Assembly (NCBI GenBank): GCA_964247055.1 | Contig: OZ176054.1 | Coordinates: 12,648,001-12,712,000, forward strand | Length of the DNA: 64,000 nucleotides | DNA from: Paragordius varius | Taxonomy: Eukaryota; Animalia; Nematomorpha | Direction: 5' to 3' | Shown: one piece after another, positions 3,102-64,000 of the stretch | How positions within the stretch are numbered: the first letter of the stretch is position 1 | How the letters are laid out: the number at the start of each line of letters is the position of its first letter | The notes under the pieces: generated by a model | The model's input: the letters and a program-made list of their open reading frames with translations, nothing else | The model's database searches: none | Told to the model about the DNA's origin: nothing | Made by a program: the position numbers and the translations under genes

Positions 3102-3656
3102 TAATATGTAATGCAATCAGGCTTCATATACATTATTAATTTTTATTAAATAATTACTGAAACGTTAGCTCAGAATTATACAAGACTGGCATCGACCGCT
3201 CACTATTTACGAATTGTTTTACAATGCTAAAACAGAATCAGAAGTTTTATTTCAAACTGCAATTGTCCCAAGTTCCATTCATTTTCTGACAAATTTGGTG
3301 ATGAAAATGAATACAACTCATAAATCGGAGCACGGAACAAGCCTTAAAGTTGTGGTATCCAACTGCCAGAAAAATTTAAGTTATCTATTTATTTTTATAA
3401 AAATATAAAATAATATTCAAAAACTAAGAAACGTTTATGCTTATTTTGATTGTTGCATATAAATTAAATGTAGATTTGTCCAAAAATGCTGTGCATGGAA
3501 GAGGTACAATATAAATTGTTTAATCCAATTTTTCTAGAAACATTTATAAATACTAAAAGAATGTGTGAAATTATTTACGAACCTGATACCTACAATTTCA
3601 TTCATCCATCTGTTGAAGGATATATTTACCCAATAAAGTTAATAAGTTTACTGTAA
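1641..3656 (+). CDS. Putative 3' exons of an unidentified upstream gene (exons 1641-1805, 3169-3354 or 3348, 3474-3656)
   Basis: Three relatively GC-rich islands, each preceded by TAG and open in phase 0: IYIDVWGPKYYIEKVCGTRTF...VPNLRYIR, LRIIQDWHRPLTIYELFY...SLKVV, and ICPKMLCMEEVQYKLF...IYPIKLISLL*. No family recognised; the second donor is uncertain. Confidence 0.4.
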
Positions 3657-3753: not shown

Positions 3754-4877
3754 CCAAGTGTGGTCATATCAGTTTTACTGATTTTTTGGATATGATTTTG
3801 AAAAAAATCTTTATCTATTTTATCATAATATTGAACATCGGCTTCTACAAATTTCGCCCACCTCTCAAGCATATGAATTTAGTGCCTGAAAATCTGATTG
3901 CCTTTTGCCGCCATTCATCAAGCCATTTTCCAACATCTTCTAAATTATTGAAGTAATGGTCAGCGAGGTCACATAGATTTAAAGTTGTATTCATCATATG
4001 GCGCGGGTTAGGAGTGTTCAGCGGATGAGAAAAAAACCATACAGGTAATTTCAAGGTTCGCCGATTTTGCTGTAAGAGTTAGAGTATCATCATATATCAA
4101 AATCACTTTACAATGTACTGTCCTTTTCAGTCATTTTTCGATGTATTCGCAATAGCGCTGTGCATTAGAGTTTTACTTAGCTTCGAAAGTTTTTAATGAA
4201 CAATACCGCTATGGTCTCGATAGATACAAAGCTTGGTCTTTTGCCAAAATATTCGGTCTTTGTGTTGATAAACGTTTGACGCAGCCAAATTTTTTTACTT
4301 TGGATTTACAAAATAAAGCCATTTGTGATCACCCGTCTTATTCCGATGCAAAAATGATTTCTTTTGACATCAGAAATTCACAAATCATTTTGTGATTTTC
4401 GATTTACTTTCATTCAAATTATGCCCATTCACCGAATCTTTGGTTTTTACATTGCTCGCAAACATCTATAGATTTTTAGTTATTGAAACATATAATGCCT
4501 CTGTCAATTGTTGTTAAGTTTGAGTTGAATCATCTACAACTCTAGCCCTTTAGCGTCTTCACAGTTGTCTACCAAAGCGTTCTTATTCATTCACATAAAA
4601 TTCGAAACCATGATAAATCGATAGAGCATGTTACCATATGTTTCTGCTAGTAAACCATATTCGGTTTTTTTATTCTGATGCCAATGCCTTACGCAAATGT
4701 TCTTATTATAAGACACTTAATTCGACAAGATGATTGAATGATAAAAATAGGGCGCTAGTTTTTACGAACTTTTGTGTGTGTTTGTCGTTTAATGTTAGAT
4801 CGAAAATGGGATTTGATTGTTAGCGTTTTTTTCGCTTAAGCCTTTCCTTAGTTTAACCGGCAACATATGTATTCTGG
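3754..4877 (-). mobile_element. Decayed near-full-length mariner (Mos1-like) transposon
   Basis: The minus strand encodes frameshifted mariner transposase segments EHLRKAL, LLAETYG, SFLHRxxTGDHKWLYFVNPK, HPLNTP (HPPYSP-like), LADHYFNNLEDVGKWLDEW and ERWAKFVEAD. Both ends start CCA(A/G) and are flanked by TA. Length is 1124 bp. Confidence 0.9.
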
Positions 4878-61676: not shown

Positions 61677-62443
61677 TTAGGCAAAAACATTGTTAATAAT
61701 TTTTTCCCAAAAAATTAATTTTGCCGGCTTAAAAAAATCTTTGGTCGTCATAAATTTTCTATAATATTTAAAATTTTATTCTGTAGATTTTCATAAATTC
61801 AGGTCAAGACCTTTTATTAGGGATAGATGCATCTGCCAGCACCATACTTGTAATTCCATTATTTTAGCATGAATGATGGTGAATTATTTAACTAAAATAT
61901 TGATGACGGAATCGTATAATCCTATATTTTTTTAAAAAAACCAAAGGCAATAGGTATGATTTTAAACCATAAAACAGATCCTACAATCCCTACTTTGTAG
62001 AATAATCATTTCATTAGGATATTCAATACCCCCCCCCCCCTTCGCAGTGTAATTATTGCATAAGTTTATTCAAATAAAGAGTAAATATTAGTTTACAATA
62101 TATATTGTGTTAATAATTTAACCTTAACCATGCTTGGTATTATTATCAGATTTTGTTATGATTTGGAAAAAATATAAATGGTATAACACTTTTGTTAAAA
62201 TATTTTAATTGCATTATTAATATTTAAACCAAATCTCGGTCGTCTTTCCAATAGGCGACAAACTGCAAATCGGTGATTACACTATTATAATTTGTTAGCG
62301 TTTTTCATACCCTTATGTTTAAATGTGATAAAATATTTATTAATGCCCATATATTTTTGCAATAAAGCCAACCGGTAATAAAAATTATAAGTGCAACCCG
62401 TAAAGCTGCCCTTTGTGTTGAAGGCCCCATGTATGATTTTCAT
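61677..62443 (-). CDS. Possible small spliced gene, divergent from NSDHL; product unknown
   Basis: Relatively GC-rich islands with open frames and GT/AG borders, e.g. MGPSTQRAALRVALIIFITGWLY (62430-62311), 62281-62230, 61980-61942, 61846-61811 and 61758-61677 (KFMTTKDFFKPAKLIFWEKIINNVFA*). Several mutually incompatible models are possible. Confidence 0.3.
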
Positions 62444-62658
62444 CTGAAACTTATATAACATTTATTAAATTATAAGCTGAAATGCGTATCCTAATCACAC
62501 TATATAAGGCATCTTATTAAGTTATAATTCATTAAAAAAATTTTCACAAAAAAAGCCGAAAATTAAAATTTTATTCAACTTATTTTATAAATTTTACAAT
62601 ATATAATGCGTTTTTGTTATTTTAACATATTGGTCACCATTTTATTATATGGTAAGCC

Positions 62659-63671
62659 ATGTGCTCTACTAAAAATATTTTAGTAATTGGAGGCAATGGA
62701 TTTTTAGGAAAGCACATTGTTGAATATTGCTTAAAAAATAATTTTAAAACATCGGTTTTAGACATTAATCCACCACTAAATAAACATCCAGATGTTGAAT
62801 ACCATGTTGGATCACTGTGTGATGAATCAGTATTTAAAATATAAATAGTTTTAGATTTTAAATTCCTGCTTACCTAATCAATGCTTGGTTATTCATTGCG
62901 CTTCCCCACCAGAATATCTCAATGATTATGATTTATTTGTATCAGTAAATGTCACCGGAACGAAAAATCTTATTAAATGCTGCATAAATAATAAAGTTAA
63001 AGTATATATTTTTATGAATACCATTTCCTAGTTTAGTTCCCAAATTATTATTAATATTCATGAAATTTATCTATTTTAAAATATTTTTTTTTAATTTAAG
63101 CATTTTAACTATACTTATTAACATAATTAATAAATGGGATAAAAATTTAAAAAATTTACCATTGTAAAATTAATTTTTAATTTATATTGTTTCATTAAAG
63201 TGTGTAAGGATCAATTAAATCAAAAAGATCAAAAAACCAATTTTATCTGTTTGAACCAACTTTATGGTGATCCGAATTTTTAAATTAAAGATTCTTAATG
63301 TGATAAAACACTCTTTGAAACATCAAAAAATTGTTAATTGATAAATTTGGAATGTTGTAGAATTGACTTAGTTATTATTGAATAAATCAAAGTGCATATA
63401 GCTAATTTTAAATGTTTAGGGACAAAGCCTAAATAATTTGAAGGTTAATAGATAAAAAAAAGTTTTGATGACCACTAATATAAAGTGTTTGAATACAAAC
63501 TGAAATGTACATTGTTGATTATAAATATTATTTCATGGGTAGAAAATAATTCTGGTAAGTTCAGCCAGTGTAGTTTATGAAGGCACCGACATACTAAATG
63601 GTAAAGAAACGCTCCCCTATGCAACTCATTACATTAGTCCCTACGTGCAAACTAAGATTGAACAAGAGAAG
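62659..63671 (+). CDS. NSDHL: Sterol-4-alpha-carboxylate 3-dehydrogenase (NSDHL/ERG26, extended SDR), first three coding exons; gene continues beyond the window
   Basis: Exons 62659-62829, 62855-63001 and 63543-63671. VIGGNGFLG (Rossmann), [27 protein letters not shown] and catalytic YVQTK (YxxxK). Confidence 0.9.
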
Positions 63672-63693
63672 GTTGATTACTCATGATTATATA

Positions 63694-64000
63694 CCATTTA
63701 CAATTCATATTCACCCTTGAACAATTCAAATTCACCTTTGAACATTTCAAATTCAAATTCACCCTAAAAATAAATTATGAAACTTCGCTCTAATATAACT
63801 CATTATTAAAATTAAATATATTTTTATGGCAAAGTGTTTATTATTTCTTCAGTATTATTTTGATTACATACAAAAATTCTTTTTTTATAAATATAAACAA
63901 AATATAGGTAATATATAATCTTAAAAAACACATAATTTATTTTAGGGTTAATTCGAATTGTTCGAAGGTGAATTCGAATTGTTCGAAGGTGAATTCGGAT
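63694..64000. mobile_element. Family A foldback MITE, running off the window end
   Basis: tata|CCATTTACAATTC, 21-bp arrays, conserved core and start of the right array. Confidence 0.85.

What the first reader, a model, noticed from the sequence alone, without database searches (positions are those of the whole stretch)
62830..62854. A 25-nt intron at a conserved position in NSDHL
Exon 1 ends ...GSLCDES, and unspliced read-through hits TAA after four codons. Removing GTATTTAAAATATAAATAGTTTTAG (25 nt) gives [26 protein letters not shown], which aligns without gaps to human [26 protein letters not shown] as I recall it. The next two exons are 147 and 129 nt, the sizes I recall for the corresponding human exons, so the intron position looks ancestral. 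All 47 GLT1 introns are 68-3873 nt, so this one is a strong outlier. Introns this small are known mainly from ciliates, nucleomorphs, microsporidia and dicyemids (established). Coexistence with kb-scale introns would imply an unusually flexible spliceosome (inference).
Basis: partly seen in the sequence, partly recalled or inferred. Interest (0 to 1): 0.8.

Follow-up and report, generated by a model that had tools for sequence, protein, structure and literature searches.

The report
Tiny 25-base intron in NSDHL
A sterol-synthesis gene (NSDHL) of this very AT-rich horsehair-worm genome is interrupted by an intron of only 25 bases, below the roughly 30-base floor long assumed for animals, at the exact spot where a sponge and a brachiopod have an ordinary intron; no RNA was available to show the cut.

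Summary
Window 62830-62854 is a 25-nt GT..AG segment with stops in all three frames. It lies between two coding blocks of an NSDHL gene with six exons and 369 codons.

Removing exactly these 25 nt joins the blocks without a gap against human NSDHL (PDB 6jkg) and 27 other homologues.

The site is an old intron position. A brachiopod (Lingula, 373 nt) and a sponge (Halichondria, 136 nt) have a phase-0 intron at the same codon, followed by exons of 147 and 129 nt, as here.

An inverted paralogue 138 kb away keeps a 25-nt segment with the same ends. The two copies give dN/dS 0.13, so the frame downstream is translated.

Short-read contigs from three samples contain the 25 nt, so it is not an assembly error.

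I verified further tiny introns of 26, 27, 28 and 36 nt in chaperonin (CCT) genes of this genome. U1 and U2 snRNAs are canonical. The mitochondrial contig has the coding palindromes typical of Nematomorpha.

What is missing is RNA: the runs I could lay were DNA-like.

The scan has reported this intron class before, on other DNA of this genome. The only animal introns under 30 nt that I found published are in dicyemids and myxobolid myxozoans.

The parts
62659..62829 (+). NSDHL exon 1 (171 nt, 57 codons, starts at ATG, ends in phase 0)
   Evidence: Translation. Matches Pfam Epimerase/3Beta_HSD. Best PDB match is human NSDHL 6jkg, chain 8-57.
62830..62854 (+). 25-nt GT..AG micro-intron: 5' GTATTT, 3' TTTTAG, no C at all, A-rich middle
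   Evidence: stops in all frames. Gapless junction. Same codon and phase as Lingula and Halichondria introns. 25 nt with the same ends in the paralogue. Present in read contigs.
62855..63001 (+). NSDHL exon 2 (147 nt, phase 0 to 0)
   Evidence: All 8 differences from the paralogue are synonymous. Same size as the matching exon in Lingula and Halichondria.
63002..63542 (+). intron 2 (541 nt, GT..AG)
   Evidence: The position is shared with Lingula and Halichondria.
63543..63671 (+). NSDHL exon 3 (129 nt), carrying the SDR catalytic Y-x-x-x-K
   Evidence: Same size as in Lingula and Halichondria.
63672..64000 (+). start of intron 3 (407 nt in all), holding a palindromic MITE-like repeat. The gene runs on beyond the window: exon 4 at L004 2079-2227, exon 5 at 3114-3231, exon 6 at 3858-4253 (L004 position + 62000 = window numbering).

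Best explanation
Window 62830-62854 is a real U2-type (GT-AG) spliceosomal intron of 25 nt. It is the first intron of a working NSDHL gene (sterol-4-alpha-carboxylate 3-dehydrogenase) in a nematomorph genome. It descends from an ancient metazoan phase-0 intron that has shrunk to about the smallest size this animal's spliceosome accepts. The four downstream introns of the same gene stayed at 407-886 nt.

Inferred mechanism: the intron is recognised as a unit across its own length (intron definition). U1 pairs weakly with GTATTT. U2, whose GUAGUA box is canonical, pairs with a TAAAT-like branch site about 9-11 nt upstream of the AG. A four-T run serves as a minimal pyrimidine tract.

Shown here: the anatomy, the homology, the conserved position, the selection on the downstream frame, the presence in genomic reads, and the existence of other tiny introns. 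Inferred: the excision itself, the branch point, and the mode of recognition.
For: (1) Removing exactly 25 nt joins exon 1 and exon 2 without a gap against human NSDHL. It also does so against 27 of the 76 full-length homologues aligned exon by exon.
(2) Lingula anatina has exons of 21, 159, 147, 129, 137, 103 and 333 nt. Halichondria panicea has 27, 159, 147, 129, 137, 103 and 327 nt. Their intron after GNLCQTE / GDLCNKE (phase 0; 373 and 136 nt) is at the same codon as GSLCDES here. All five introns of this gene coincide with introns 2-6 of those animals.
(3) The inverted paralogue has intact exons and a 25-nt segment with three substitutions, no indel, and the same GT, AG and last 11 nt. 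All four long introns differ by indels.
(4) Between the copies dN/dS is 0.13 (dS 0.167). Exons 2-4 show 19 synonymous changes and 1 non-synonymous change. The frame that is reached from the start codon only if those 25 nt (or another 3n+1 nt) are removed is therefore under purifying selection.
(5) A 111-nt contig of run X1 spans L004 807-917 with no gap. Contigs of X3, X4 and X5 also cover the segment.
(6) Other tiny introns in the same genome show exact profile contiguity: CCT-gamma 27, 28 and 36 nt (TIGR02344 positions 1-26 | 27-43 | 44-64 | 65-96) and CCT-delta 26 nt (positions 37 | 38).
(7) The best U2 and U1 snRNA genes carry the canonical GUAGUA and ACUUACCUG.
Against: No RNA evidence. 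The one reads call returned DNA-like contigs only, and no contig skipped 829 to 855 among the joints listed.

The inside of the intron changes at about the synonymous rate (3 of 25 against pS 0.15). Apart from the length and the two ends, nothing shows constraint. With only 25 nt, the lack of an indel is not significant on its own.

The 5' splice site pairs with U1 at only about 4 of 9 positions.

A donor at 62806 (49-nt intron) would also keep the frame.

Partial retention of the intron, giving a 61-residue product or a decay target, cannot be excluded.
Confidence: 0.87

Rival explanations
1. The intron is 49 nt. The donor at 62806 is used with the same acceptor, and the eight codons VGSLCDES are not part of the protein.
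For: 62806 begins with GT and 49 nt keeps the frame. Donors in this gene are weak in general (GTATAT, GTTGAT, GTGGGA, GTTTTT), so donor strength does not decide.
Against: The eight residues align with human NSDHL (hvgslcd on flgdlcs). They also align with the end of the 159-nt exon of Lingula and Halichondria. Dropping them would open an 8-residue gap against the homologues that now abut exactly. Introns of 24-29 nt exist elsewhere in the genome.
Confidence: 0.05
2. The 25 nt are not removed, or only rarely. The gene is dead or decaying, or the retained segment is a switch that truncates the protein after 61 residues.
For: No RNA was seen. There are two copies, so one could be redundant.
Against: Both copies have six intact exons, intact splice ends and intact catalytic motifs. 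dN/dS is 0.13, with 19 synonymous changes to 1 non-synonymous in exons 2-4. The segment sits exactly on an ancestral intron position, which a random disruption would not.
Confidence: 0.04
3. Assembly or sequencing artefact: the real intron is longer and was collapsed, or the 25 nt are spurious.
For: The genome is very AT-rich and repeat-rich.
Against: Logan contigs of run X1 span the place without a gap. Contigs of X3, X4 (another sample) and X5 (another study) cover it too, and no length difference is listed there. The paralogue has the same 25-nt length.
Confidence: 0.02
4. Removal or skipping without the spliceosome: an IRE1/RtcB-type cut like the 26-nt XBP1 intron, a U12-type intron, or ribosomal bypassing.
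For: The size is close to the 26-nt XBP1 intron (my own knowledge).
Against: The segment contains no C, so the CNGCNGN loop sites of IRE1 substrates cannot be present. The 5' end is GTATTT, not the U12-type RTATCCTT, and there is no TCCTTAAC box. The codon before the gap (TCA) has no matching landing codon, as bypassing would need. The position is that of an ordinary spliceosomal intron in other animals.
Confidence: 0.01

Closest known systems
Ultra-short introns of Dicyema japonicum and myxobolid Myxozoa (PMC13644364; Lu et al. 2019, cited there)
   Same: Animal GT-AG introns under 30 nt in parasites. Splice signals are reduced to about GTA...AG, with a few A residues upstream of the AG as the likely branch site. 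U2 is canonical. The introns sit at conserved intron positions between conserved exons.
   Different: In those genomes the median intron is 22-27 nt, so tiny introns are the rule. Here one of five NSDHL introns is tiny and the rest are 407-886 nt. The tiny introns I found all lie in the first ~75 codons of their genes. The lineage (Nematomorpha, Ecdysozoa) is not mentioned in the main text of that paper's 51-genome survey.
Tiny introns of ciliates (Paramecium about 25 nt, Stentor 15-16 nt) and of microsporidia
   Same: Similar length, AT-rich, GT-AG, removed by a conventional spliceosome (stated in PMC13644364; the rest is my own knowledge).
   Different: In ciliates nearly all introns are this size. 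Those organisms are not animals.
The orthologous intron of NSDHL in Lingula anatina (373 nt) and Halichondria panicea (136 nt)
   Same: Same codon, same phase 0, same flanking exon sizes downstream (147 and 129 nt).
   Different: 5 to 15 times longer. Those genes have one more intron after codon 7-9, which this gene lacks. The tardigrade Ramazzottius has lost this intron altogether.
Unconventional 26-nt intron of XBP1 (IRE1/RtcB)
   Same: The size only.
   Different: No twin stem-loops with CNGCNGN loops are possible, because the segment has no C. Here the ends are GT-AG and the position is a spliceosomal one.

Membership tests
U2-type GT-AG spliceosomal intron | GT at the 5' end and AG at the 3' end | tested here: met
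   62830-31 is GT and 62853-54 is AG. The paralogue has the same ends.
U2-type GT-AG spliceosomal intron | Removal restores a continuous reading frame that is colinear with homologues | tested here: met
   Junction falls on 6jkg chain 59/60. Zero-residue junction in 27 of 76 homologues.
U2-type GT-AG spliceosomal intron | Position and phase shared with introns of orthologues | tested here: met
   Lingula and Halichondria have a phase-0 intron at the same codon.
U2-type GT-AG spliceosomal intron | Branch-site-like motif and pyrimidine run upstream of the AG | tested here: inconclusive
   TAAAT lies at about -9 to -11 and TTTT at -6 to -3. Similar TAAT-like motifs occur in the other tiny introns. 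There is no statistical test and no lariat data.
U2-type GT-AG spliceosomal intron | Excised from the transcript | not testable with these tools
   The single read-laying run returned DNA-like contigs only. The runs guessed to be RNA held none of the words.
Ultra-short (<30 nt) animal intron class (dicyemid / myxobolid type) | Length under 30 nt with reduced splice-site motifs | tested here: met
   25 nt, and only GTA of the 5' consensus is kept. Others in this genome measure 24-29 nt.
Ultra-short (<30 nt) animal intron class (dicyemid / myxobolid type) | Tiny introns are the majority (median 22-27 nt) | tested here: not met
   Four of five NSDHL introns are 407-886 nt. CCT genes have introns of about 0.5-1.2 kb. 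The sample is small and there is no genome-wide histogram.
U12-type intron | 5' RTATCCTT and a TCCTTAAC branch box | tested here: not met
   The 5' end is GTATTTAA and there is no C in the segment.
NSDHL (sterol-4-alpha-carboxylate 3-dehydrogenase, 3beta-HSD family) | Best match to NSDHL, 3Beta_HSD domain, GGxGFLG and YxxxK motifs, NSDHL exon structure | tested here: met
   Best PDB hit for exons 1 and 2 is 6jkg. PF01073 positions are colinear across exons. The motifs are read. The exon structure equals that of annotated Lingula and Halichondria NSDHL. Enzyme activity was not tested.
Pseudogene | Relaxed selection (dN/dS near 1), broken frames or broken splice sites | tested here: not met
   dN/dS is 0.13, and all exons and splice ends are intact in both copies.
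Nematomorpha (identity of the genome) | Long perfect palindromes in the mitochondrial genome, and a very AT-rich nuclear genome | tested here: met
   Contig C44 is 15,693 nt. Its cox1 uses TGA as a sense codon. It has perfect inverted repeats with arms up to 208 nt, as published for the phylum (PMC6649704). I did not check that the repeats lie inside coding genes. Nuclear GC is about 25%, against 26.9% in Gordionus. No rRNA or multigene phylogeny was made.

The most novel reading that the evidence does not exclude
Horsehair worms are a third, independent animal lineage with introns under 30 nt, and with a different layout from the two published ones. Old introns near the 5' ends of genes have collapsed to a floor of about 24-29 nt, while introns further down the same genes stay at hundreds to over a thousand nt. 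If so, an animal spliceosome with canonical U1 and U2 handles a distance of only about 15 nt between the 5' splice site and the branch point alongside ordinary introns. Standard gene finders and read aligners, whose minimum intron is set at 20-60 nt, would then mis-annotate the starts of many genes in this phylum.
Probability: 0.75. Interest if true: 0.65.

Novelty: new member of a known kind. Interest (0 to 1): 0.55.

Why it matters
Introns under about 30 nt were long held to be absent from animals. As of September 2026 they are published only for dicyemids and myxobolid myxozoans, where they are the norm in very reduced genomes (PMC13644364).

This is a clean, homology-anchored case in an ecdysozoan phylum. 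It sits at an intron position that goes back at least to the sponge-bilaterian ancestor, inside a gene whose other introns are ordinary. That makes two questions testable in one organism: how short an animal intron can be, and what decides which introns shrink.

There is also a practical side. Annotation pipelines that forbid such introns will truncate or frameshift genes such as this one.

Tried and rejected
RNA evidence:
- The one run search listed no holder recorded as RNA. The one reads call (X1, X3, X4, X5) gave DNA-like contigs that also cover the introns. No joint 829 to 855 was among the 15 joints shown out of 529.

Close relatives:
- Word searches with exon 6 and exon 1 found nothing within the length limits.
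- The full HMMER search with exon 6 gave at best 46-52% identity. The best full-length hits are intronless genes on protist or metagenome contigs.
- An unnamed eukaryotic contig (L013) shares introns 4 and 5, but its exons 1-3 lie beyond the 10 kb I could fetch. I did not pursue it.
- P0262 (Asterias) is not on record, and P0011 was withheld.

Methods that did not work:
- A blind scan for GT..AG of 18-40 nt between open frames does not discriminate: 200 on the sense strand against 142 antisense and 273 with scrambled signals. Only cases anchored by homology were kept.
- The short upstream flanks of the CCT-alpha, CCT-theta and first CCT-delta tiny introns gave no PDB or NCBIfam match. Those three rest on the motifs read across the junction.

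Other points:
- No retrocopy of the spliced gene turned up in the genome search.
- A 19-nt variant using the AG at 62847-48 was rejected because the next in-frame codons are TTT TAG.
The joined protein was never sent to any search or fold, and that step is left out.
- I took no contig for human, and no human DNA was used.

Full report
WHAT IS THERE

The window is G000:C5:12648001-12712000 of a 110.6-Mb assembly in 44 contigs, with about 25% G+C. From the ATG at 62659 an open frame of 57 codons ends in ...GSLCDES at 62829. The next 25 nt (62830-62854) begin with GT and end with AG. They contain no C and have a stop in every frame. Unspliced read-through ends after four codons. From 62855 a second block of 147 nt reads ILNSCL...HCASPP..., and a third block of 129 nt follows at 63543-63671.

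With 10 kb fetched beyond the window (L004) the gene is completed by exon 4 (L004 2079-2227), exon 5 (3114-3231) and exon 6 (3858-4253). That makes six exons and 369 codons. The introns measure 25, 541, 407, 886 and 626 nt, and all are GT-AG.

The exons match Pfam 3Beta_HSD colinearly. For exons 1 and 2 the best solved structure is human NSDHL, 6jkg. The NAD-binding GGxGFLG and the catalytic YxxxK are present.

IS EXACTLY 25 NT WHAT MUST GO?

Against 6jkg, exon 1 residues 5-55 lie on chain 8-57 and exon 2 residues 10-44 on chain 69-103. The last residue of exon 1 and the first of exon 2 therefore fall on chain 59 and 60. I aligned each exon separately to 76 full-length homologues from the HMMER search. 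In 27 of them the two pieces abut with nothing missing or extra. The rest are proteins whose N-terminal part aligns poorly or carries insertions of its own.

Two alternatives were considered. A 19-nt intron using the AG at 62847-48 runs straight into TAG. A 49-nt intron from the GT at 62806 keeps the frame, but it removes eight residues that align in all good homologues.

The joined protein was not sent to any tool.

THE POSITION IS ANCESTRAL

A word search with an amphipod NSDHL (P0049) gave annotated animal orthologues. I fetched three gene loci and rebuilt their exon chains so that they translate exactly to the annotated proteins.

- Lingula anatina has exons of 21, 159, 147, 129, 137, 103 and 333 nt.
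- The sponge Halichondria panicea has exons of 27, 159, 147, 129, 137, 103 and 327 nt.

Their second intron (373 and 136 nt, phase 0) lies after GNLCQTE and GDLCNKE. This is the same codon as GSLCDES here, and it is followed by exons of the same 147 and 129 nt. All five introns of the gene coincide in position and phase with introns 2-6 of those two animals. The tardigrade Ramazzottius has lost this intron.

The recalled human exon sizes were not checked.

A PARALOGUE AS A NATURAL EXPERIMENT

The gene lies in an inverted segmental duplication. The second copy is about 138 kb away on the other strand. It has the same six exons, all open, and the same splice ends.

Its first intron is also 25 nt. 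It shows three substitutions and no indel, with the GT, the AG and the last 11 nt unchanged. All four long introns differ by indels, with 32 to 192 gapped columns.

Over the coding sequence dS is 0.167 and dN is 0.022, so dN/dS is 0.13. In exons 2-4 there are 19 synonymous changes against 1 non-synonymous, and all 8 changes in exon 2 are synonymous. The reading frame downstream of the 25 nt has therefore been under purifying selection in at least one copy, and probably both, since the duplication. That frame can be reached from the start codon only if 3n+1 nt are taken out.

NOT AN ASSEMBLY ARTEFACT, BUT NO RNA

The run search listed ten runs, none recorded as RNA. I laid X1, X3, X4 and X5. 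All four behave as DNA, because their contigs also cover the long introns. A 111-nt contig of X1 spans L004 807-917 without a gap. Contigs of X3 and X4 (another sample) and X5 (another study and label) cover position 841, where they read G as the paralogue does. No length difference is listed in the segment. So the 25 nt are in the DNA, but the excision itself was not observed. This is the main weakness of the case.

IT IS NOT ALONE

To test for myself whether such introns exist elsewhere, I searched the genome with the chaperonin family PF00118 and fetched nine CCT/HSP60 loci.

A blind scan for short GT..AG between open frames was useless: 200 hits against 142 and 273 in controls. Homology picked out clear cases.

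- In CCT-gamma (L024), three introns of 27 nt (451-477), 28 nt (529-556) and 36 nt (620-655) separate exons that fall on positions 1-26, 27-43, 44-64 and 65-96 of the NCBIfam model TIGR02344. The fit is exact.
- In CCT-delta (L020), a 26-nt intron (562-587) joins model positions 37 and 38 of TIGR02342.
- Three more cases rest on the motifs read across the junction, because their upstream flanks are too short to score. These are a 25-nt intron in L020 (484-508), a 24-nt one in CCT-alpha (L023 4669-4692, minus strand) and a 29-nt one in CCT-theta (L025 219-247).

All of these lie within the first ~75 codons. Most start with GTAT or GTTT, end in TTTAG, TATAG or TTAAG, and have a TAAT-like motif about 7-12 nt before the AG. 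The same genes also have a 71-nt intron (L023). Gaps of about 1.2 kb separate hits that adjoin in the profile (L022 567 to 1754).

MACHINERY AND ORGANISM

The best U2 snRNA gene (177.7 bits) carries the canonical GUAGUA branch-point box. The best U1 (124 bits) carries ACUUACCUG. Nothing points to an unusual spliceosome. The 5' end GTATTT pairs with U1 at only about four of nine positions, which is the reduced signal described for dicyemid and myxozoan tiny introns (PMC13644364).

The assembly's 15.7-kb mitochondrial contig has a cox1 with TGA as a sense codon. It also has perfect inverted repeats with arms up to 208 nt. This is the hallmark published for Nematomorpha (PMC6649704), though I did not check that the repeats lie inside coding genes. 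The nuclear G+C is close to the 26.9% of Gordionus. The genome is thus not a myxozoan or a dicyemid.

COMPARISON WITH WHAT IS KNOWN

A paper of September 2026 states that animal introns under 30 nt are known only from myxobolid Myxozoa and Dicyema. Its main text does not mention Nematomorpha. No paper in the library links hairworm genomes with short introns.

The kind, an ultra-short GT-AG intron, is therefore known. This case is a new member in a new lineage. It differs in that tiny and ordinary introns share one gene, and in my small sample the tiny ones are all near the 5' end.

Earlier agents of this scan reported the same class on other DNA of this genome. One note says RNA showed such cutting in another gene; I did not test that.

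VERDICT

It is unproven at the RNA level. Interest is moderate to high: it would surprise by the textbook rule, it is no longer unique among animals, and this scan has already seen the class repeatedly.

Noticed in passing
window 62004-64000 and on to L004 ~5093, against G000:C5:12562001-12574049 (minus strand): The whole NSDHL gene lies in an inverted segmental duplication about 138 kb apart (dS 0.167). This copy carries about 3.5 kb more downstream, with a 1070-residue open frame on the minus strand (L004 5119-8331) that looks by eye like a retrotransposon reverse transcriptase. The paralogue lacks this insert.
   Followed up: partly
paralogue, reverse complement of C5:12562001-12574049, positions ~1497-1575 (intron 2): Intron 2 of the paralogue holds a tandem copy of the 3' end of exon 2 together with its donor site. 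This resembles the 'introns built from exon-edge repeats' of note s1-252849.
   Followed up: no
window 63688-63996 (intron 3) and L004 ~2584-2955 (intron 4): A repeat of about 300 nt is present in more than 40 copies at 85-92% identity. It matches on both strands, so it is palindromic and MITE-like. It gives contig-depth spikes of 10^5-10^6.
   Followed up: no
L024 451-477, 529-556, 620-655; L020 484-508, 562-587; L023 4669-4692 (minus); L025 219-247: Seven more tiny introns (24-36 nt) lie in four CCT chaperonin genes, all within the first ~75 codons. Four of them were verified by exact contiguity in NCBIfam profiles.
   Followed up: yes
G000:C44 (L011, L012): The 15,693-nt mitochondrial contig has perfect inverted repeats with arms of up to 208 nt and no spacer. 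It also has an array of 49-52-nt palindromic units at L011 6752-7451.
   Followed up: partly
G000:C5:12727253-12788030 and C3:257000-527000; C6:565000-634000: There are many U2 snRNA matches (46), in clusters. One cluster starts about 15 kb beyond this window. U1 copies are clustered on C6. Many copies score low and may be decayed or interrupted.
   Followed up: no
run X5 ('organism B', study P2): Low-depth contigs that are 100% identical to this locus sit under another organism label. This could be the same species filed differently, or a host sample that carries the worm.
   Followed up: no
G000:C1:2737277-2738757: A second gene of the 3beta-HSD family has long open exons (176 and 215 codons) and is not NSDHL-like in structure. 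NSDHL itself is kept in two copies, although ecdysozoans such as insects and nematodes do not make sterols (my own knowledge). Tardigrades keep NSDHL too.
   Followed up: no
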